Shown piece by piece: positions 43,934-55,378 of a stretch of DNA of 64,000 bases; position 1 is the stretch's first letter; the number at the start of each line of letters is the position of its first letter. Source of the DNA: Rebecca billardiae RCC1528. Its lineage: Eukaryota > Protista > Haptophyta. The stretch lies in NCBI GenBank assembly GCA_965240325.2, contig OZ251246.1:558001-622000 (forward strand). The letters run 5' to 3'. The notes under the pieces are model-generated. The model made no database searches and was not told the origin of the DNA. It saw only the letters and a list, made by a program, of their open reading frames with translations. Position numbers and translations under genes: made by a program.

Positions 43934-46669
43934 GTTTATGATAATAATTAATATCACACGACCGCGCCAACTGCCAGCAATATATAGCAGGCTGCAATAG
44001 TTCGAGCAGTCGATTATTTAAAGCGCGCACTTTAGCACGGCCGGATAGATTAGGCTCCGTAGTGTCAGCAGATATCCGGCGGCGGAGGCGACATGGCCAT
44101 AATATATACTACTATTATATTGCCACGACCATACTTATTCAAGCTTCATCATCCGACATCCGTCGTCACTACTCACTCTTCAGTAGTATGTGCAGTACGT
44201 GCTGCTCGATCGGCGCGGACAGCGCGCGCTCTGCAGTCTGCTGAGCAGCAATATCAGCGCGCAGCAGAAGTATATATAGTATTAGTACTCAGATAAGCGC
44301 GCCTCAGTTACTGATAACGACGGCGGTATATATATACACCGCGGTCCGAAAAGCGCGTCGTCGGACTCCGACATTAAATATATTTCCGGATTAAAGATGG
44401 ATTCGTCATACCCCAGACCGGCAGACGATCATATCAGACAGTTCTAGCGGATTATTACTATACACTGCTGCTGGCATCATTCCGCCGACGAACTACAAAG
44501 AATAGGCTGCTTTCATCATTCTGCTTAATTCGCCACGTCGTCAGCCGCCTCGTCTGCGGATGTGAGCTTGGTCCAAATATAATGATGATCAGCATTAAGT
44601 AAATTCATTGGCCATTCTCACTAGCTTAGTATACGTACTGCTACGGCGGTATCATATTGAGATGTAACTGCAACTACTGCCGCCTATACTGTACGGCCTA
44701 CGGGCCGAGCTATAAGACTCGGCGCCGGCGCGGCGACCACTGCCATGCCGCGGTAACGTGTGGTCTTGCCACTGGCGACTGGCGTGTGGCTGCCAGCACC
44801 AGTGGCCGGCAGCAGATTCCGGAATCGCCCGCTCACCGGAACACTGCTGCCCACTCTGCGCTGATTCAGAAGCGCTGCCGCAGCCTGCTGTTGTCGTCGC
44901 CGTGTCCGCGGAGCTGATTGAGTGCCATTATTCATTCGGATATCGCAGAGTCTCGAAAGAACTGAATGATACGTGTAACAAAGTCTCTCTCTATTCTGAC
45001 TCGGAAGCGTAGAGCAGTTGTCGTGAGCGGTTGGCCGGAGTCGCCCAGCCCGCACTATGAACTTCCCGCCACTTTCTCTGCAACTAAGGCACCTCCCCGG
45101 CCGCGGCGGTCTCACGCTCCGAAAGCGGTTCATCAAAGCCCGGCCCTGGGGCAGTGGATGATGAACTCCTCCCGACTCCTGGCGGGAACGCTGCCATCCA
45201 TGCTCCGCTCTGCAACTCGTAGCTTCCTCCTCGTCCACTTTACCGCGCCTACGATTCTCAGCGCGCATGCGAACGTCGCTTCGGAGTTCAGAACTCAACG
45301 AGCAGTCCGTATCGGCCTCAGTCAGCTGTGAGTGTGAGTACCAGCCTGGCGCGCGATGCGATCAACTCGGGTCACGAGCTGCGGCTGATCGAGGCAGCCA
45401 TATAAAATGTGCTGCATACAGTACGTTCGTGCAACCGCACACAGCCCGAAGACTCCGAATCATTCAGGGCGCTCACAGTCTGTTGTTTCAACTCTCCACT
45501 GCTGCATGCACGGCTCCTGCCGGAGGCTGATCGGCACTCGTCACAGCCGTCTACAGCTACCTCAAAGTGCACGATCGGTGGCTCAAGGCGGGGCGGCTTA
45601 CGCGCAGGTTCATTGCTCCTCGCTCAGACGCAGCTCAACCCCCGAGTCGATCGCATATCGCGCCGGGCCGGCGCTCACGGCTGAGACCGGAGCGGAATGA
45701 TCATCCGGAAGCGACGCTCGCATGCGCGCTGATCGCAGGCGCGGCAAAGTCGACGACGCGCAAGCTGCGGGGCGCGCTGCGGAGCATGCCAACGGTCTTA
45801 TGCCACGCGAGCAACACGTCACCTTCGCACGGCAGGCGCCATCATCCGATCGGATACTCCGATACTACTGCGTACTCTCATTCTACTTGGGCACTTTCTA
45901 CTTGAGGAGATTCTCCAAAATCCCTAATGAACACAATTCATTGTGCAGCACCAAGAGAAGGCGGTAGAAGGTGAGCGAATCCTCTCGAAACTTGTCTTCT
46001 GATATCTTGCATCCCCTAATGACAGGCTTGAACTATGATCATGTACCTCGGTAACCTCGCCCCTACGAGCCCCATACATTAAAGCCATGCTCCGATACCG
46101 GCCGGTAGGGTTCCCACCAATTTTTCACGCCGGTTCGATAATCTAGAAACGTCCTAAGTACACGGGTCAACGCAAATATATGGTTTCACTGTGGGTTCGG
46201 AACCTGACCTGTGAAATTGCATCCGGGTATACGAGGGTATTCAGATTTCTAAGCGTACGACGAGCATCTTCGACCCAATATATATTGGCCGTTGATCATA
46301 CTTCCAGAAGCCAATTAAGGTTCCCACTTTCATCGCCGATGCAAGCTTCGTTGATAGTCGTTCGATTCGAATATACTATGAGGCACGCCGAAACTCTACC
46401 GAGAGGTACTTTCGTGCCTCGTTAATCACCGTGGGACGGGTAGTTCGAGCCGACACATAGAGAGAACTCTTAAGAAGCTCTATTCGCTTGTGATCTCAAT
46501 TCATGATCGTGGATGGTTCCGACTTGCGTGTTCGTCAATCCTCGATCACGGAGTAAGCAAGTCGCCCGTCCGAGCCCGACCGACCTGGTCGTCCACCTTC
46601 GAGCCCAAAAAAAACCAACTGCTCCACGCGAGCACACGCACACGCTCAGCCGCGCTGCACGCGCGCACC

Positions 46670-49600
46670 ATGCTCGAATCACTGAAAGCCGTGCTCCTCG
46701 GCGCGCGCCATGGGTCCAACGCGCCAAAGGGCATCCTCCACGCGCACGAGCGGCCTCGCGGCGCGGATAAGCACATCCGCTGGCGCCAGGTGCTCACCGC
46801 ACAGAACGACAAGGAAGCCGACGAGTTCAACCGCGAGATCGAGCGCGAAATGTTCGACAAGTGGTCGTCGCTCTACAAGCTGATCCATCTGCTGATGCTG
46901 ATGTACGAGGAGCTGGCACTCCCCGTGCGCGTCGCCTTCCCGGCGTGGGTCATCGCCGACCCCTTCTTCATCGCCGTCGACCTGATCACAGACGTGCGCG
47001 CGGCGCGTGTGCAGCGCCGCGCGCGCCGCGCGCGCGCGCGCGCACGCGAGCCCGGACGCTGACGCTCGGCTCCCGCGTGCCCGTGCCTCGCGCGCCTCTC
47101 CGCTCCATACCGCGCCCGCCGCGCGGCAGATCTTCGAGATCATCTGGGTCTGGACGGAGGTGCGCGAGAACTACAAGAAGACCAAGGACGGCCACGGCCA
47201 ACACGCCGTGCACTGGCGGTACACGGCGCGCTGGGTGCTCGTCGACGCGATCTCGGTCGTCGGCCTGTACGCCGCACGCGCCTTCTTCATCCTGCGCGGC
47301 GGCGTGGACCCGTTCCTCCTCATCCAGCTCGTGCGCCTGCTGCGCGTGTACGACCTCACGATCGCGATGGAGGACATCAACCAGGACCTCTCGACCAACG
47401 TGACCTTCCTGAGCGTGTTCAAGTTCTCGCTCGTGCTCGTCTCCGTGCCGCACTGGGTCGGCTGCGTCTGGTGGTTCATCGCCGAGCAGGAGCAGCACGA
47501 CCACGGCCCGCTCGAGCTGCCCTCGTGGCCGGCGCAGCTGCACGCGATGGCGGGCACCGAGGAGTTCACGCCCGACGCCACGTCCGGCATCGAGCGCTAC
47601 CTGATGTCGTCGTTCATGGCGTGGGGCGGCGTCACCGCGATGGGCTACGCGGGCGTGATGATCGCGAACGAGTACGAGGTCGTCATGGCCTGCCTGATCG
47701 CCGTCATCCAGATCGTGTTCTACGCCTTCGTGCTCGGTACGCTCTTTCACTACCTCGTGCGCACCGACGAGAACGTCGTGCACTTCAAGGCGCTGATCAA
47801 GACGCTCGACACGTTCATCGAGACGAAGAAGCTGCCCGAGGAGCTCGCCGAGCTGATGCGCGACTACTTCGAGTACCGCCAGAAGAAGGCCGCGACGGGC
47901 GCGCTCCGCGTCATCGGCATGATGCCGCACGCGCTCCGCTTCCGCTACGCGTCGGAGCAGTACATGGGCCACTGCAAGGCGTCGTGGTGCTTCTTCGGCA
48001 CGACGGAGCAGCTCCTCGGCGCCGTCGCGCTCGAGATCACCGAGCGGTTCGTGATGCCGCGCGAGCAGGTGCTCCTCCGCGGCGACGGCTCGCACGAGCT
48101 GCTCTGGTGCGTGCTCGGCGCGCTCAACGTGATGAAGGGCGACCAGCACATCACGACGATCCGCTCCGACCTGGGCGAGGGGCAGCTCGTCGGCGAGACC
48201 GCCTTCTTCCTCGGCGTGCCGCAGCCGTACACGGTGCGCGCGACGCCCGACTCGGACGTGAAGCTGCTCGTCTTCTCGCACGACTCGTACGAGGAGATCA
48301 TCAAGACGTACCCCGAGCAGTCCGACCTGATCGTGCGCAACGTGCTGCGCAAGTTCGGCCTGAGCAAGAGCGGCGAGGAGCTCAACATGGAGTCGACGGG
48401 CGAGCTCGACGAGGACGAGGCGAAGGAGCTGGCCGAGATCAAGGCGGTGATCCGGCTCGCGATCCTCGAGCGCAAGGTGAACGCGCTGCAGCAGATGTTC
48501 ACGGCCGCGGTCACCGGCGACGTCGAGACGATCCGCTCGCTCGTCGCGCGCGGCTTCGACATCAACACGGGCGACTTTGACGGCCGCACCACGCTCCACC
48601 TCGCCGCGTCGTCGGGCCACACGGCGGTCGTGGCGACGCTCTGCACGCTCGGCGCGCAGATCGACGCGCGCGACCGCTGGGAGGCCACGCCCATCGCCGA
48701 CGCGGTCACCGGCCGGCACACGGCCGTCGTGGAGGAGCTGCAGCGCTTCGGCGGCATCCTCGAGCTCGCGGAGGCGGCGGCGCGCATGCACGAGGCCGCG
48801 GTCGCGGGCGACCTCAACTACATGACGCTGCTCGTCTCGCAGGGGATCGCGATCAACGTGGCGAACCACGACGGCGTGACGGCGCTCCACCTCGCGTCGG
48901 CGATCGGCAACGTGCGCGTCGTGGACTACCTGCTCACCAAGCTCGCCGACGTGAACGCGAAGGACCGCTGGGGCATGACCGCCATCGACGACGCGATCGC
49001 CAACGAGCAGCGCATCGTGACGCAGCTGCTCGCGGTCAACATGGCCGTCCCCGACCCGGAGCGGATGTCGAAGAAGATGCGCAAGGCGGCGAACGAGGGC
49101 GACGCGGAGAACCTGCAGTTCCTCGTCGAGGTGGGCGCGTCGCTCGAGGCGGTCGACTACGACGGGCGCACGCCGCTCCACCTCGTCGTCGCCTCGGGCT
49201 CGCTCGCCGCGACGCACTACCTCGTCGGCAAGGCGGCCAACGTGAACGCGATCGACCGCTGGGGCAACACGCCGCTCGTCGATGCGCTCAAGACCAACCT
49301 GGACGCCGCGGCGATCCTGGTGAAGCACAACGACGCGACGCTGCCCAAGCGCTGCGAGAACGACCAGGAGCTGCAGGGGCTGTACCAGCAGTGCCTCGTG
49401 CTGCCCATGTACGAGATGATCCACAAGCTGCACGCGCTGCAGGAGGAGCGGCGGCAGCTGACGGTGACCAAGAACGCCAAGCGGCGCGAGGTCGGCCTCT
49501 CGTTCAACGAGCTGAACGAGCAGATGCACAAGCTGCAGAAGCTGCACGCCGCGCTGTACAAGTCCGTGCTGCGGCACACCGACCACTGGATCACCGCGTA

Positions 49601-52600
49601 CGGCCTCGAGGACGACGAGGAGAGCGAGGCCGCGGAGGACGAGGAGGAGGAGGACGACGACCTCGACGGGCTCGGCGGCGTCAGCATGGCGCAGGCCAAG
49701 GCGGAGGCGAAGGCGGCGGCGGAGGCGAAGGCGCAGGCGAAGGCGGAGCTGGCGGAGGCGGCGTCCGCCGCCGCGGCGATCATCGCCGGCGCCGCCGAGG
49801 CCGACGCGCCCTCCGAGGAGCACCTCCAGGCCAAGGAGTTCGTGCGGCTCATCCTGCGGCTGCCCAAGGCGGAGGCCGGGCTGCAGCGCATCAAGGCGGA
49901 GTACGAGGAGCACGTCGGGCTGGCGGGTGCGACGACGAGCGACGAGCTGGCGCGGCGGCGCGCGGAGCACGCGGCCGTGTCCAAGCTGATCGGCTCGTAC
50001 GGCCTCTCCGACTCCGAGGCGGCCGCCGCCACCGACGAGATCTACCAGGAGCTCAACGGCATGCTGAACGACGTCTCGCCGATGCACCCGGACGTGTTTG
50101 AGGCGCTCGCGGAGATCCCGGAGGGCAGGCACGAGTCTGAGCCGCCGCCGGCGGAGGAGGAGCCGGCGTTCCCGGGGCTGGGCACGAGCGCGAACGTCGC
50201 GCCCGCGCCCGTCGTCGACGCCGCCGCCGTCGGCGCGCCCGCCGACGAGGAGTCGGCGCTGGCCGCGGCGGCGCCGCTCGAGACGGCGCCCTCCAAGGTG
50301 CTCACAGAGCCGCTCGGACGGTCGATGGTGCTCGACGGCACGCGCAACCCGCGCTCGGCGTCGGCGCTCGAGGCGAACCGGCGCACGTCGACGCTCGACC
50401 CGGCGCGGCGCGCGTCGATGATGGAGGAGGCGCGCCGCCGCGCCTCGCTCGCCACGCCGGTGCGCACGCTCTACCTCTCCGAGGTGGGCCACGTCGCGCT
50501 CTTCACCTCGCGCAAGTTTGTGGAGACGCTCGCGGCGCGGCACGCGCGCACGGTGCGCACGTCGATGACGACGGCGGAGCTGGCGAGCCACGAGGCGCAG
50601 CAGGGGCTCGATGTGGACGAGGTGCCGTCGACGCAGATGGGCCGCCGCTCCCGCGGCCGCACCAGCGGCGGCATCTTCACCTCGAGCGGCAGCGTGAACT
50701 CGCCGCCGGGCACGCCGCCCGGCTCGCCGTCGCGCAACAGCCGGTGGCGGCGCAGCCAGCAGACGGTGCCGGTGGCGCCGGAGGAGGCGAGGGAGTCGGC
50801 CGCGGAGGAGTCGGCGCACGCGCACGGCGAGGCGGCGGCTTCGACGGCGGACGCCGGCTCCGTCTCCGACGCCGCGTACCTCGTGAGCCGCATGTTCCGC
50901 GTCTTCGACCGCAACCGGCGCGGCGCGATCAAGCTGAGCGACGTGCGCATCGTGCAGTACGAGCTGGGCGAGATGGGCGGCCCGGAGATCAAGGCGCTGC
51001 TCGCGGCGCTGCGCGACGCGACGGGCGAGGTCGAGGCGCTGCGCTCGAAGGTGTACAAGGCGATGCTGCCCGAGGACATGCCCGACGACGCCGACGCGCT
51101 CAACCACCCGGAGAAGCAGAGGACGACCACCGTCAAGTCGTTCTCGCGCGTGCACTTTGCGATCGGCGTGTCGCGCTGGATCCTGTCGAGCGCCGAGACG
51201 GAGGGCAAGGACAGCGACGGGGAGGACGGGGAGCGCGGCACCGACCAGTCCGACACCGTGGGCGAGGCCGTCGTCGCCGCCGCCGCCGCCAGCAAGCTCA
51301 AGCTCAAGCTGCGGCCGAGCGCGGACACGGGCAAGCGCGACTCGGCGGCGGCCAGCTCGCCGCTCAAGCTCGGCAAGTCGATCACGGGGAAGAAGATCGA
51401 GCACAACCTGGAGGACGCGCCGCGGTACGAGGACCTGGAGGACGCGCTCAAGTCGTGGGCCGCGTACATCGCGCTCGCCGACCTCATCGACCAGCGCATC
51501 GACACGAGCCGGCTGAAGGCGCACGAGCTCGCCGACCCCGAGGTGCTGCTCAACTTTGCGTCGCACACGGTCACGCTGCGCACGATGGGGCCGGAGACGG
51601 CGGAGCACCTGCGGCAGTGGTGCGAGCAGAAGCTCGAGATCAAGCTCGCGCCGCCGGGGCACGCCGCCGCCACCGCGACTGCCGCCGCCGAGGGCGGCGT
51701 CGACCAGTGGGCCGGCGCGGCGATGACGGCCGAGTCGGAGGGCTACGTGTCGTGGATGCGCGTCGCGGAGGAGCTGCGCGAGCAGGGCAACAAGCTGCGC
51801 ATCGCGAGCATCGGCGTGGCCGAGCAGGGGGTGGTCCTCACGCCGTACGAGCGCGTGCGCAACCACCTCGTGCAGCGCAAGCAGCGGCTGCGCGAGATGA
51901 CCAACGGCGGCGAGGGCCGCGTCGAGATCAAGCCGTGGTACGTGCTCGACCACACGTCCAAGTTCTACGTCAACTTCCACCGCCTCTTCGTCGCGTGCGT
52001 GATGTACGACGCGATGTTCGTGCCGGTGATGCTCACCTTCCTCTCGGAGACGAGCCGGCTCGCCTGGATGCCGTACCTCAACGCCACGATCGACCTCCTC
52101 TACTGGCTGCGCATCGTGATGAAGTTCACGACGTCGTACCTGAACGAATCGTCCGTCCACATCGTCGACCCCAAGATGATCCGCAACCGCTACCTGATGA
52201 CGGACTGCGTGCCCGACCTGATCGCGGCGCTGCCGCAGGACGGGATCGCGCTGCTCTTCCACGAGCCGTACGAGGTCGTGTACGGCCTGCGCCTCATGCG
52301 CCTCATGAACCTGCGCCACGCGTGGCGCGTGCACAAGGCGTGGCTCGCGTCGCTCGGCGACGACGACATGTCGAGCTGGCTGTGGCACTACATCTCGGTG
52401 CTGCTGCTCGCCTCGCACTACATGGCGTGCTTCTGGAACCTGCTGTCGACCTTGGAGTTCAGCGAGCGCACGTGGCTCGACGCGTACACCGCCGACGCCG
52501 CGGCCATCGGCAAGCCCCTCGACTTTGTCACCGTGCCGCCCGAGCAGGCGCTCTTCACGCGCTACCTGATCAACCTCTACTTCGTGATGAGCATGATCAC

Positions 52601-55378
52601 CACGCTCGGGCTGACGCAGGTGCCGGTCAACTACGGCGAGATCGTCGTGTTCCTCGTCCTCATGGTGCTCAACCTCACCATCTGTGCGCGCCGGCCGCGC
52701 GCCGCGCGCGCGCCGCGCGCCGCGCGCTCGCGCTCACGCACGCCCGGTGCCCGCGCGCCGCCCGCGCCGCGCGCGCGCCGCAGACGCGTGGTGCGTCGGC
52801 CAGATCTCCACGCTGGTGATGAACCAGGACGCGGAGCTGGTGGGCAAGCGCCAGCAGATCGAGACGGTGAAGCACTTCCTCAAGCACGCGATCATCTCGA
52901 CCAAGCTCAAGGAGGACATCGAGTCCTTCTTCCGCGCGCACGTCACCGAGTCGTCCGGCTCGTCGGTCAAGACGGACGAGATGTTCTCCGCGATGCCGGT
53001 GGCGCTGCAGATCGACGTGTCGGTGTACATGTACCGCGCGATCGTGGGCCAGGCGTCGCTGCTCGAGAACACCTCGAACGGCTTCCTCAACCGCCTCGCC
53101 GCGACGCTCCGCGAGCGGATCCTCGAGGAGGAGGCGTTCCTCTTCCGCGCGGGCGAGGCGAGCAAGGAGCTGTGCATCGTGTGGACGGGCTCGCTCGAGC
53201 TCACGAACGAGGCGGAGGTGGCGGACGCCGAGCCCGAGCCCGCAGGCAACGCCGGCCCCGGCGACACGGTCGGCGAGGTGCCGTTCGTCTTCGGCATCCG
53301 CCATTTCCAGAACGCGCGCGCCGCGGCCGGCATGGAGTCCAAGGTGATCGTTGTGCAGCGGCCGGACTATGTCGAGCTGCTCAAGGCCTTCCCCGATGAC
53401 GAGGACAACATCATGGACAACGCGATCCGCCAGTATGACGGTGCGCGCCCGCCCGCCCGCGCGCCGCGCGAGCACACGCTCCGCGGCCCTCGCCACGACC
53501 GTCACCGCGAGCCGGCCGTCGGACGCGCCGCGAGCGCGCGCGCATGCGCTCACATGCGCGCGCCGCGCCGCGCCGGGTGCCGCGCGGGATGCAGGCGCGA
53601 TGACGGCTCGCTCGGGCCGCTCGAAGACGTCCGCGCACTCGAGCAAGTACTCGGCCGCGCGCTCGTCGGCCAAGTCCTCGACGACGATGAGCAACTCGAT
53701 CACCGACGCGTCCTCGGACGCGTCCTCGCACCTCGACAACGTGCGCCTGATGATCAGGGACATCAAGCGCAAGCGCGAGGACCTGATGCTCACCAAGCTG
53801 TGCGCGGCGTGCGCGAACGGCGAGCTGGACAAGGCGCGGCGCATCATCTCGGCGAGCGGCGTGAGCGTCAACCACGCCAACGTCAACGGCCGCCGCCCGC
53901 TGCACCTCGCCGCGTGCTTCGGCCACCTCGGCGTGATCCAGTTCCTGCTCGGCCACCGCGCGGACGTGAACGTGGCCGACCGGTACGGCGGCACGCCGCT
54001 CGAGGAGGCGCTGCGCGAGAAGCACGACGCGGCAGCCAGGCTGCTCGAGGCCAACGGCGCGAAGCGCCTGATGAAGGACCCGGTCGAGAAGCTGTGCGCG
54101 GCCGCGTGCAAGGCGGAGGGGCTCGAGACGCTGCGCTACATCCTGCGGTACGACACGGTGGGCGAGGTGACCTGCCGCGACGCGAACAAGCGCACGCCGC
54201 TGCACGTGGCCGCGGCGGAGGGCCACATCGAGAACGTCAAGCTGCTGCTCGAGCTGCACGCCGACATCAACGCGGTCGACCGGTACGGCGTGACGCCGCT
54301 GCAGGACGCGGTGCACGCCAAGCACGAGGACGTGTGCGACCTGCTGCTCGCGCGCAACGCCAACCTCGGCGCCACGTTCGACAGCGCCGCGTACATGTGC
54401 ACGGCGGGCGCGGCGGGCGACGTGGCGCAGCTCGAGCGGCTCGTCAAGTACCGGTGCAACGTCAACATCCAGGACCACCAGGGCCGGACGGCGCTGCACC
54501 TCGCCTCGGCGAACGGGCACGTGGGCGCGTGCCACTTCCTGCTCGACTGCGAGGGCATCGACCCGAACGTCGAGGACTTCTACGGCAACACCTCGCTCGA
54601 CGACACGGAGCGCGAGGAGTCGAACGAGGTGCAGCTCACGCGCATGCTGCTCAACCTGCGCGGCGCCAAGAACGGCTCGCACGAGCGCGCGGTCCGCAAC
54701 CTGTCCGAGCACGCGGCCAAGAAGCGCGCGGCGGACCTGGCGACGGTGCAGCAGCGCGAGCAGGTGTGCGGCATCGCGGTGGTGCTGGCCAAGTGGGTGC
54801 GCGAGCAGCGCAAGGTGGCGTACAGGTTCAAGAAGCGGGTGGACGAGATCACCAAGCTCGAGAACGAGGAGGGCCCCGACGCGGTCAAGCAGACCCAGGC
54901 GCGCTTCTGGGTCGAGGTCAAGAAGTACGCGGCGCGCAATGCCCTGCGCATCGAGTACTTCAAGAATGACATCACGCACGGCCTCGACACGACGGCGAGA
55001 TCAGCGGACGACCTCGACATCATCCCGCTCAAGGAGATGCGCGGCAGGGTGCGTGCCCGGCGTCCGACCGCGCGGGCGGCCGCTCCCCCCGGCGCGCGCG
55101 CGAACGGTGCTGCCGGCCACCATGCCCGAGCGCGCCACTCATCTGCGACCGCCCCGGCGCACCGCCCTCCCCTATGTCCACAGGCCAATGACCTGGTCAC
55201 GATGCAGGAGTCGGTGGCATTGACGTTCTCGCGGCTCGGCGAGGTCGACTTCTCGTCCGTCAAGAAGACGGGCCTCTCGGCCGAGGAGATTATTATCCTC
55301 AAGTCGGGCATCTCGCCGGAAGAGCTCGAGGCGATGGGCGCACACTCGGGATCTGATACTGACGGTGCCGCTCAGTGA
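46670..55378 (+). CDS. Tandem two-module cation channel, 2 x (6TM - CNBD - ankyrin repeats), ~2,727 aa; exons 46670-46993, 47130-52683, 52784-53440, 53595-55048, 55184-55378
   Basis: Module 1: S4 LVRLLRV, HWVGCVWW, pore VTAMGYAG, CNBD LVGETAFFLGVPQPYTVRA, ankyrins (DFDGRTTLHLAA, DRWGNTPL). Linker with coiled coil and EF-hand-like MFRVFDRNRRGAI. Module 2: S4 LRLMRLMNLR, HYMACFW, pore ITTLGLTQ, CNBD TVGEVPFVFG, ankyrins. No stop between modules. Confidence 0.9.

What the first reader, a model, noticed from the sequence alone, without database searches (positions are those of the whole stretch)
46670..55378. Concatenated two-module Shaker/SKOR-like channel with two different non-K+ pore filters
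Seen: one spliced ORF contains two complete 6TM + cyclic-nucleotide-binding-like + ankyrin modules, and the 5.5-kb exon spanning the junction has no stop. Pore 1 reads VTAMGYAG (~47631-47654); pore 2 reads ITTLGLTQ (~52595-52619). Established: plant AKT/SKOR/GORK subunits are single modules with TxGYGD that tetramerise. Internally repeated channels I know (TPC 2x6TM, Nav/Cav 4x6TM, 4-repeat CNGK) do not repeat a CNBD-ankyrin module. Inference: a dimer would give a fixed 2:2 pseudo-tetramer with an asymmetric GYA/GLT filter, perhaps non-selective or Ca2+-permeable. This could be an undescribed algal channel class.
Basis: partly seen in the sequence, partly recalled or inferred. Interest (0 to 1): 0.8.

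Follow-up and report, generated by a model that had tools for sequence, protein, structure and literature searches.

The report
Doubled Shaker-like ankyrin channel gene
One intact algal gene encodes two different plant-Shaker-like channel units (voltage sensor, pore, nucleotide-binding-like domain, ankyrin repeats) in a single 2,727-residue chain; neither pore has the potassium signature, and the layout belongs to an old, untested family I found in no paper.

Summary
A five-exon gene (46670-55378, + strand, 2,727 codons) carries two complete 6TM + C-linker/CNBD-like + ankyrin units. The junction lies inside one 5,554-nt exon with no stop. Third-position GC is 0.99 there, including 0.986 in the ~830-residue linker, against about 0.5 in the flanks, so the linker is coding and this is one reading frame.

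Relatives of 2,400-3,000 residues match it exon by exon. Some sit on intron-free transcript contigs. Named ones come from Diacronema, Rhodelphis, Pycnococcus and Cymbomonas.

In a tree, first units and second units form two separate, well-supported clades with matching branching, so the doubling is old.

The pore loops read AMGYAG and TLGLTQ where plant Shakers have TTGYGD. Loss of GYG in unit 2 is nearly family-wide.

The likely product is a dimer forming a fixed 2:2 pseudo-tetramer, probably not potassium-selective. That part is inference.

Two-repeat tandem CNBD channels were described from sequences in 2020, but without ankyrin and, in my tree, in a different clade. I call this a new variant of a known kind.

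The scan found this family before on other DNA of this genome, including a copy about 19 kb past this window. No RNA run was listed for this gene.

The parts
46670..46993 (+). Exon 1: start codon, N-terminus, S1 and first half of S2 of unit 1 (108 codons)
   Evidence: ATG at 46670. Donor GTGCGC at 46994. Aligns to residues 64-156 of relative P0001 and continues directly into exon 2.
46994..47129 (+). Intron 1 (136 nt, GC 0.85, GTGCGCGC...CAG)
47130..52683 (+). Exon 2 (5,554 nt): rest of unit 1, the whole linker, and S1 to mid-S6 of unit 2
   Evidence: No stop in frame and GC3 0.990. Collinear with P0001 residues 157-1968.
47316..47357 (+). S4 of unit 1: only two arginines, followed by Tyr-Asp where AKT5 has His-Arg
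   Evidence: Alignment to AKT5. Family alignments.
47631..47654 (+). Pore loop 1, VTAMGYAG (AMGYAG where AKT5 has TTGYGD)
47776..48449 (+). C-linker and CNBD-like domain of unit 1. The phosphate-binding cassette at 48189-48242 lacks the ligand arginine and resembles the plant Shaker form.
   Evidence: Pfam cNMP_binding. Alignments.
48477..49346 (+). Ankyrin repeat domain of unit 1
   Evidence: Pfam Ank families, E down to 2e-33. One alignment stretch to SKOR runs from the TM part into ankyrin.
49350..51896 (+). Linker between the units (about 830 residues, rich in Ala, Glu and Ser) with conserved blocks
   Evidence: GC3 0.986 and no stop. Blocks conserved with P0001, P0002 and P0003.
49479..50090 (+). 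Conserved helical block after ankyrin domain 1
   Evidence: 23-28% identity to P0001 and P0003 at the same relative position
50862..51230 (+). EF-hand-like block of the linker (core 50892-51002). Position 5 of its loop is an arginine kept in all four aligned relatives.
   Evidence: 16 invariant columns in 4 proteins. Model shows helix-loop-strand-helix twice, pLDDT 63. Foldseek finds only weak hits, nearly all EF-hand proteins. Pfam finds nothing here.
51930..52683 (+). Unit 2 transmembrane part, S1 to mid-S6. Its S4 at 52284-52337 has four Arg and one Lys.
   Evidence: Pfam Ion_trans. Aligns to KCNH5 and KCNH1 S1-to-pore at E 6e-15, and to AKT1.
52596..52619 (+). Pore loop 2, ITTLGLTQ (TLGLTQ where KCNH5 has TIGFGN); one residue shorter than a K+ filter
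52684..52783 (+). Intron 2 (100 nt, GC 0.93)
52784..53440 (+). Exon 3: end of S6, C-linker and CNBD-like domain of unit 2. Its cassette at 53269-53322 carries the conserved Arg-His.
   Evidence: Pfam cNMP_binding. 38-48% identity to the same part of P0001, P0002 and P0003. Cassette alignment.
53441..53594 (+). Intron 3 (154 nt, GC 0.84)
53595..55048 (+). Exon 4: Ser-rich stretch, ankyrin domain of unit 2 (about 53789-54679) and a helical C-terminal region
   Evidence: Pfam Ank families, E down to 7e-39. 37-40% identity to relatives.
55049..55183 (+). Intron 4 (135 nt, in frame and stop-free, GC 0.80)
   Evidence: Donor GTGCGTGC in phase 0. With the intron removed, the C-terminus matches those of P0001, P0002 and P0003 without an insertion.
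55184..55378 (+). Exon 5: C-terminal tail and TGA stop

Best explanation
This is one intact nuclear gene of a very GC-rich, haptophyte-type alga. Its 2,727-residue product holds two diverged channel subunits in a row. Each unit has a voltage-sensor-like S1-S4, a pore, a C-linker, a CNBD-like domain without the ligand arginine, and ankyrin repeats. A cytosolic linker of about 830 residues joins the units and contains a conserved EF-hand-like block.

Shown here: the single continuous coding frame, the domain order, membership of an old family with the same order, and the non-canonical pore loops.

Inferred: two chains pair so that four pore loops, two of each kind, line one pore. That would be a hard-wired 2:2 pseudo-tetramer. 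Ankyrin-bearing plant Shakers already lower their cytosolic symmetry from four-fold to two-fold through ankyrin pairing, and the tandem chain would make that two-fold arrangement permanent. Unit 1 has lost the filter threonine and the second glycine. Unit 2 has lost Tyr-Gly and is one residue shorter. The pore is therefore probably not K+-selective and more likely passes cations non-selectively. Unit 2 keeps more S4 charge than unit 1, so it would be the main voltage sensor. Neither CNBD-like domain is expected to bind cyclic nucleotides in the canonical way.
For: - One frame: exon 2 (47130-52683) has 0 stops, and GC3 is 0.97-1.00 in every 300-nt window including the linker (0.986), against about 0.5 in the flanks. 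Unit 1 therefore has no stop codon of its own.
- Gene model: all four introns share the donor GTGCG[CT]GC.
- Domains: Pfam finds Ion_trans, cNMP_binding and Ank twice.
- Collinear relative: P0001 (2,704 aa) matches exon 1 through exon 4 in order and across every exon junction. It is a single ORF on an 8,395-nt intron-free contig.
- Transcript-derived relatives: P0046 and P0195 carry MMETSP transcript names, and three Rhodelphis proteins come from EukProt.
- Family size: 13 full C-A-C-A and 4 partial C-A-C representatives among the best 150 of 1.84 billion proteins.
- Named members: Diacronema lutheri KAG8466681.1, Rhodelphis marinus, Pycnococcus provasolii and Cymbomonas tetramitiformis.
- Tree: all second units fall in one clade (SH-aLRT 99) and all first units in another (99), with matching inner branching.
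- Linker under constraint: conserved blocks, with 16 invariant columns in the EF-hand-like block.
- Pore, S4 and cassette readings.
- Two-fold cytosolic symmetry of GORK, AKT1 and SKOR through ankyrin dimerisation: bioRxiv 10.1101/2024.12.17.628833.
Against: - No RNA run was listed for this stretch, so this copy has no direct transcript or protein evidence. An internal start giving unit 2 alone cannot be excluded.
- Dimer assembly, selectivity and gating are untested for any member of the family.
- Some paralogues keep GYG in unit 1 (P0001, P0046, P0047, P0050), so loss of K+ selectivity may not be general. Selectivity cannot be read reliably from sequence, as PMC7576140 also notes.
- The tree is a quick search with SH-aLRT support only and contains some long branches.
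- The EF-hand reading is weak: Pfam finds nothing, the model has pLDDT 63, and Foldseek gives no significant hit.
Confidence: 0.8

Rival explanations
1. These are two adjacent paralogous genes, and the open frame between them is a by-product of the GC-rich composition or of the gene model.
For: Long ORFs arise by composition here: the antisense strand carries an 1,810-codon ORF. No RNA run was listed for this copy. Gene callers do split such loci, as in the metagenome contig L003.
Against: The linker has GC3 0.986 in the same frame as both units, and unit 1 has no stop. Linker blocks are conserved in relatives. Relatives are single ORFs on intron-free transcript contigs. The NCBI annotation of Diacronema lutheri has one 2,867-residue gene.
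Confidence: 0.04
2. The chain is made as one protein but is cut in the linker, giving two separate subunits in exact 1:1 supply that then form a heterotetramer.
For: The linker is long and rich in Ala, Glu and Ser. Large parts of it are unconserved and modelled with low confidence. That would suit a protease-accessible tether.
Against: No known cleavage motif or protease domain was found. Conserved linker blocks suggest a role beyond a spacer. No data address this either way.
Confidence: 0.08
3. It works as an ordinary K+-selective Shaker-type channel despite the altered filters.
For: Gly-Tyr of unit 1 is kept. Paralogues keep GYG or even GYGD in unit 1. The closest solved channels with ankyrin are K+ channels.
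Against: Unit 1 has lost the filter Thr, the second Gly and the Asp. Unit 2 has lost Tyr-Gly and is one residue shorter. 17 of 18 second units sampled lack GYG.
Confidence: 0.2
4. This copy is a decaying or non-conducting duplicate of the neighbouring paralogue.
For: Earlier scan notes report a near-twin about 19 kb beyond the window, which I could not read. The GYA filter of this copy departs from the GYG of several paralogues.
Against: All 2,727 codons are intact, with no frameshift and with conserved splice sites. GC3 is 0.99 throughout. P0002 shares GYA.
Confidence: 0.05

Closest known systems
Ankyrin-bearing plant Shaker channels (SKOR, GORK, AKT1, AKT5)
   Same: Each unit has the same order: S1-S6 joined by a short S4-S5 link, C-linker, a CNBD-like domain lacking the ligand arginine, then ankyrin repeats. 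One alignment stretch runs from S3 into the ankyrin repeats of SKOR (E 7e-42). The cassette of unit 1 resembles the AKT5 form.
   Different: There are two units per chain instead of one. There is no TxGYGD filter and no KHA domain. Without the ankyrin part, unit 1 is about as close to bacterial SthK and animal KCNH as to AKT5. Streptophyte-alga Shaker-like proteins (Closterium, Chlorokybus) form a clade of their own.
[quoted passage not shown] 2020, PMC7576140)
   Same: Two 6TM-CNBD repeats sit in one chain. The repeats share low identity. First and second repeats form separate clades with parallel branching, read as co-evolution of the two halves (for the paper, here).
   Different: The paper does not use the word ankyrin and reports no tandem channel from haptophytes, green algae or Rhodelphis. 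Ankyrin-free two-repeat proteins in my sample fall in a separate clade (SH-aLRT 100) together with four-repeat proteins. Their chains are about 1,200-1,900 residues, without a long linker.
Two-pore channels (TPC1)
   Same: The logic is the same: two different 6TM units in one chain, a dimer forming a pseudo-tetramer with two kinds of pore loop, and, in plant TPC1, EF-hands in the cytosolic link between the units. This comparison rests on established knowledge; PMC7576140 lists TPC as a tandem channel.
   Different: TPCs have no CNBD or ankyrin, and no TPC appears among the sequence matches. This is a resemblance of design, not of descent.
Four-repeat CNGK (tetraKCNG) channels
   Same: They are covalently joined 6TM-CNBD units forming one pore. 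About 35 four-repeat proteins are among the best 150 matches.
   Different: They have four repeats and no ankyrin, and they fall in a different clade.

Membership tests
Plant Shaker-type K+ channels (AKT/KAT/SKOR/GORK) | 6TM core with voltage-sensor-like S1-S4 and one pore loop per unit | tested here: met
   Unit 1 aligns to AKT5 residues 156-522 and SKOR 179-730. Unit 2 aligns from S1 to the pore of KCNH5 and AKT1. Pfam finds Ion_trans.
Plant Shaker-type K+ channels (AKT/KAT/SKOR/GORK) | K+ selectivity signature TxGYGD | tested here: not met
   Unit 1 has AMGYAG and unit 2 has TLGLTQ at the aligned positions.
Plant Shaker-type K+ channels (AKT/KAT/SKOR/GORK) | C-linker plus CNBD-like domain lacking the phosphate-binding arginine | tested here: met
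   Pfam finds cNMP_binding in both units. Cassette position 11 is Gln in unit 1 and His in unit 2. The numbering against canonical CNBDs is from my own knowledge.
Plant Shaker-type K+ channels (AKT/KAT/SKOR/GORK) | Ankyrin domain after the CNBD-like domain (AKT/SKOR/GORK subgroup) | tested here: met
   Pfam Ank families are found after both CNBD-like domains.
Plant Shaker-type K+ channels (AKT/KAT/SKOR/GORK) | C-terminal KHA domain | tested here: not met
   No PF11834 hit here, whereas the precomputed Pfam list of the Closterium relative P0007 includes PF11834.
Plant Shaker-type K+ channels (AKT/KAT/SKOR/GORK) | One unit per polypeptide, four chains per channel | tested here: not met
   There are two units in one ORF. 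The number of chains per channel is not testable here.
Plant Shaker-type K+ channels (AKT/KAT/SKOR/GORK) | Placement inside the streptophyte Shaker clade | tested here: not met
   Closterium and Chlorokybus Shaker-like rows form their own clade (98). Unit 1 and unit 2 each lie in other starred clades (quick tree, no land-plant rows included).
Two-repeat tandem CNBD channels (PMC7576140) | Two 6TM-CNBD repeats in one chain | tested here: met
Two-repeat tandem CNBD channels (PMC7576140) | First and second repeats form separate clades with parallel branching | tested here: met
   The unit 2 clade has support 99 and the clade holding all unit 1 rows has 99. The same sub-groups recur in both.
Two-repeat tandem CNBD channels (PMC7576140) | Common descent with the dinoflagellate and oomycete tandem channels | tested here: inconclusive
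   Ankyrin-free two-repeat proteins form a separate clade with support 100. Their organisms could not be named: one is from an unnamed transcriptome sample and one was not on record.
Four-repeat CNGK channels | Four 6TM-CNBD repeats in one chain | tested here: not met
   There are only two channel units.
Two-pore channels (TPC) | Sequence relationship to TPC 6TM domains, with no CNBD | tested here: not met
   No TPC is among the solved-structure matches, and both units carry CNBD-like domains.
EF-hand Ca2+-binding domains (linker block) | 12-residue loop with oxygen ligands at positions 1, 3, 5 and 12 | tested here: not met
   The loop reads D-R-N-R-R-G-A-I-K-L-S-D, and Arg at position 5 is invariant in four relatives. 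Pfam finds no EF-hand here. The Pycnococcus relative does have a Pfam-significant EF-hand pair in its linker.

The most novel reading that the evidence does not exclude
The family is a distinct class of hard-wired two-fold channels. A dimer of tandem chains places two K-type loops (GY-x) opposite two shortened non-K loops in one pore. That would give a non-selective or Ca2+-permeable voltage-dependent conductance. The ankyrin pairing that regulates plant Shakers would have become an intramolecular, permanent feature, tuned by an EF-hand-derived linker module. It could be one of the unidentified cation conductances behind excitability and signalling in haptophytes and prasinophytes.
Probability: 0.3. 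Interest if true: 0.75.

Novelty: new variant of a known kind. Interest (0 to 1): 0.55.

Why it matters
Plant Shaker channels with ankyrin repeats were recently shown to switch their cytosolic part from four-fold to two-fold symmetry by pairing ankyrin domains. Here nature appears to have fixed two non-equivalent subunits in one chain, in a family shared by haptophytes, early green algae and Rhodelphis. That gives a natural system for asking what two-fold symmetry does in these channels. It also lets one ask how a pore built from two different loop types selects ions, and which genes carry cation currents in ecologically important marine algae. It matters for annotation too: members are currently labelled hypothetical, 'CNBD-containing', or even 'potassium channel skor', and gene callers sometimes split them.

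Tried and rejected
- RNA evidence: the look-up of sequencing runs listed no run.
- A word search restricted to the transmembrane part of unit 2 scored nothing.
- A word search with unit 1 returned only four short fragments and no plant Shakers, so no land-plant sequences are in the tree.
- Pfam on the linker alone gave no domain.
- The protein atlas gave only sub-threshold EF-hand-like leads.
- The fold of the linker block has moderate confidence, and Foldseek against PDB gave no significant match.
- I first considered that stand-alone proteins of the unit 2 type might show a fusion origin. At least two such rows are artefacts: P0189 is the downstream half of a tandem gene split by a gene caller, and P0179 starts inside an ankyrin domain. 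That idea stays open.
- No second copy lies inside the window. The copy reported about 19 kb past the end could not be read.
- The organism is not the deposited Diacronema lutheri assembly, since no near-identical protein exists in either protein collection.
- All work was exon by exon, by reference.

Full report
**What is in the sequence.** On the + strand an ATG at 46670 opens a 108-codon exon. It is followed by a 136-nt intron and a 5,554-nt exon (47130-52683). Three further exons follow (52784-53440, 53595-55048, 55184-55378), ending in TGA. All four introns begin GTGCG[CT]GC, end CAG, and are 80-93% GC. The coding sequence is 8,184 nt, or 2,727 residues.

Pfam finds Ion_trans, cNMP_binding and several ankyrin families twice along this model.

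**One gene or two.** The junction between the units lies inside exon 2, so splicing is not at issue. An open frame alone is weak evidence here, because the antisense strand carries an 1,810-codon ORF. That ORF is expected when nearly every sense codon ends in G or C.

Codon structure is the decisive signal. Third-position GC is 0.97-1.00 in every 300-nt window of exon 2 and 0.986 in the linker, against about 0.5 in both flanks. Frame 1 has no stop and frame 2 has 53. The linker is therefore translated in the same frame as both units, and unit 1 has no stop codon of its own.

**Relatives.** A word search with the whole of exon 2 found proteins of 2,440-2,899 residues. P0001 (2,704 aa) matches exon 1, exon 2, exon 3 and exon 4 in order, and each exon boundary falls on adjacent residues. 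This supports every splice site. P0001 is a single ORF filling an 8,395-nt contig without introns, with GC3 0.97. P0027 is a similar case.

An exhaustive HMMER search with unit 1 gave 3,561 hits. I mapped channel and ankyrin segments on the best 150:

| Layout among the best 150 | Count |
|---|---|
| Full channel-ankyrin-channel-ankyrin | 13 |
| Partial (channel-ankyrin-channel) | 4 |
| Four-repeat, no ankyrin | about 35 |
| Two-repeat, no ankyrin | about 20 |
| Single units | the rest |

Named members of the doubled form are:
- Diacronema lutheri KAG8466681.1, annotated as one 2,867-residue gene
- three Rhodelphis marinus proteins
- two MMETSP transcripts
- a Gymnodinium smaydae transcript on a long branch
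- Pycnococcus provasolii, deposited as 'potassium channel skor'
- Cymbomonas tetramitiformis

No near-identical protein exists in either collection, so this genome's own proteins are not in them.

**History of the doubling.** Within this gene the two units share 22% identity in the C-linker/CNBD-like part and 29% in the ankyrin part. BLASTP finds no match between their transmembrane parts. Unit 1 is 32-41% identical to first units of relatives and about 25% to their second units.

I built a tree of 111 unit sequences (quick IQ-TREE search, SH-aLRT support).
- All 18 second units fall in one clade (support 99).
- All 16 first units fall in another clade (99), together with single-unit proteins that include Mesostigma.
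- Shaker-like proteins of Closterium and Chlorokybus form a third clade (98).
- Ankyrin-free two- and four-repeat proteins form a fourth (100).
- The same sub-groups recur in the first-unit and second-unit clades.

The doubling therefore predates the split of these lineages, and the halves have evolved together. Five rows in the second-unit clade looked like single-unit proteins. At least two of them are artefacts: a split gene call and a truncated protein. I found no verified stand-alone protein of the second-unit type.

**Reading the parts.**

*Unit 1.* Aligned to AKT5, the filter TTGYGD reads AMGYAG. The S4 keeps two arginines, followed by Tyr-Asp where AKT5 has His-Arg.

*Unit 2.* Aligned to KCNH5, TIGFGN reads TLGLTQ. 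In the family alignment this loop is one residue shorter than a K+ filter. Its S4 has four arginines and a lysine.

*Across the family.* Gly-Tyr of unit 1 is nearly always kept, but the next residue varies (G, A, E, D, Q, V, I). 17 of 18 second units lack GYG.

*CNBD-like domains.* Both cassettes lack the arginine that binds the cyclic phosphate. Unit 1 has the plant Shaker form. Unit 2 has an Arg-His kept in 14 of the 17 second units aligned there.

*The linker.* It contains a helical block after ankyrin domain 1 and a block with the pattern of an EF-hand, 16 of whose columns are invariant in four proteins. Loop position 5 is an invariant arginine, so canonical Ca2+ binding is unlikely. The model folds as helix-loop-strand-helix twice at moderate confidence. 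Foldseek gives only weak hits, nearly all EF-hand proteins. Pfam finds no EF-hand in this linker, but it does find a significant EF-hand pair in the linker of the Pycnococcus relative.

**How it most likely works.** Twelve membrane spans place both ends and the linker in the cytosol, so the layout is topologically sound. By analogy with TPC and with the published tandem CNBD channels, two chains should form one pore lined by two loops of each type. This is inference.

Ankyrin-bearing plant Shakers (GORK, AKT1, SKOR) reduce their cytosolic symmetry from four-fold to two-fold by pairing ankyrin domains of neighbouring subunits, which holds GORK closed (10.1101/2024.12.17.628833). A chain with two ankyrin domains could make that pairing permanent. 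This too is inference.

The filter changes argue against K+ selectivity, but sequence alone cannot settle this.

**Comparison with what is known.** Pozdnyakov et al. 2020 (PMC7576140) described two-repeat tandem CNBD channels from dinoflagellate and oomycete sequences. Their text does not mention ankyrin, and they report no tandem channel from haptophytes. Five full-text searches found no paper describing a doubled CNBD-ankyrin channel. I therefore class this as a new variant of a known kind: real, old, fairly widespread, and untested.

**Earlier notes of this scan.** The same family was noted at least eight times in this genome, including a copy with the same two pore motifs about 19 kb past this window. 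Those notes agree with my results. I treated them as leads and repeated the tests on this copy.

**Limits.**
- No RNA run was listed.
- The tree is a quick search and contains no land-plant rows.
- The organisms of the ankyrin-free tandem proteins are unknown.
- The joined spliced protein was never built or searched, by instruction.

Noticed in passing
window 46986-52418, - strand: An 1,810-codon antisense ORF overlaps exon 2. It is a by-product of sense codons ending in G or C (GC3 0.99), which leaves antisense codons almost never starting with T. It is not a gene.
   Followed up: partly
window 55049-55183: Intron 4 is 135 nt long, in frame and free of stops, so its retention would add 45 residues without breaking the frame. 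Relatives have no insertion there.
   Followed up: partly
L002 1-780: Upstream of the called ORF, this transcript contig encodes a unit 1 pore loop reading TSTGYGS, out of frame with the ORF. This is probably an assembly frameshift. It shows that this paralogue lineage keeps a canonical GYG in unit 1.
   Followed up: partly
L003 646-10123: On this metagenome contig, gene calling cut a doubled channel gene into several same-strand pieces. The downstream piece (P0189) is labelled 'ankyrin repeat protein/Ca2+-binding EF-hand superfamily protein' and looks like a single-unit channel.
   Followed up: partly
P0149 (Gymnodinium smaydae transcriptome): A doubled ankyrin channel is recorded from a predatory dinoflagellate transcriptome and sits on a very long branch. 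It could be prey or contaminant RNA.
   Followed up: no
Best 150 hits: About 35 representatives are four-repeat 6TM-CNBD proteins of 1,600-2,900 residues, and about 20 are two-repeat proteins without ankyrin. Covalently repeated CNBD channels are therefore common in public sequence data.
   Followed up: partly
window 44000-46600: GC falls to about 0.55 just upstream of the gene, against 0.65-0.73 around it. This is probably the promoter and 5' untranslated region.
   Followed up: no
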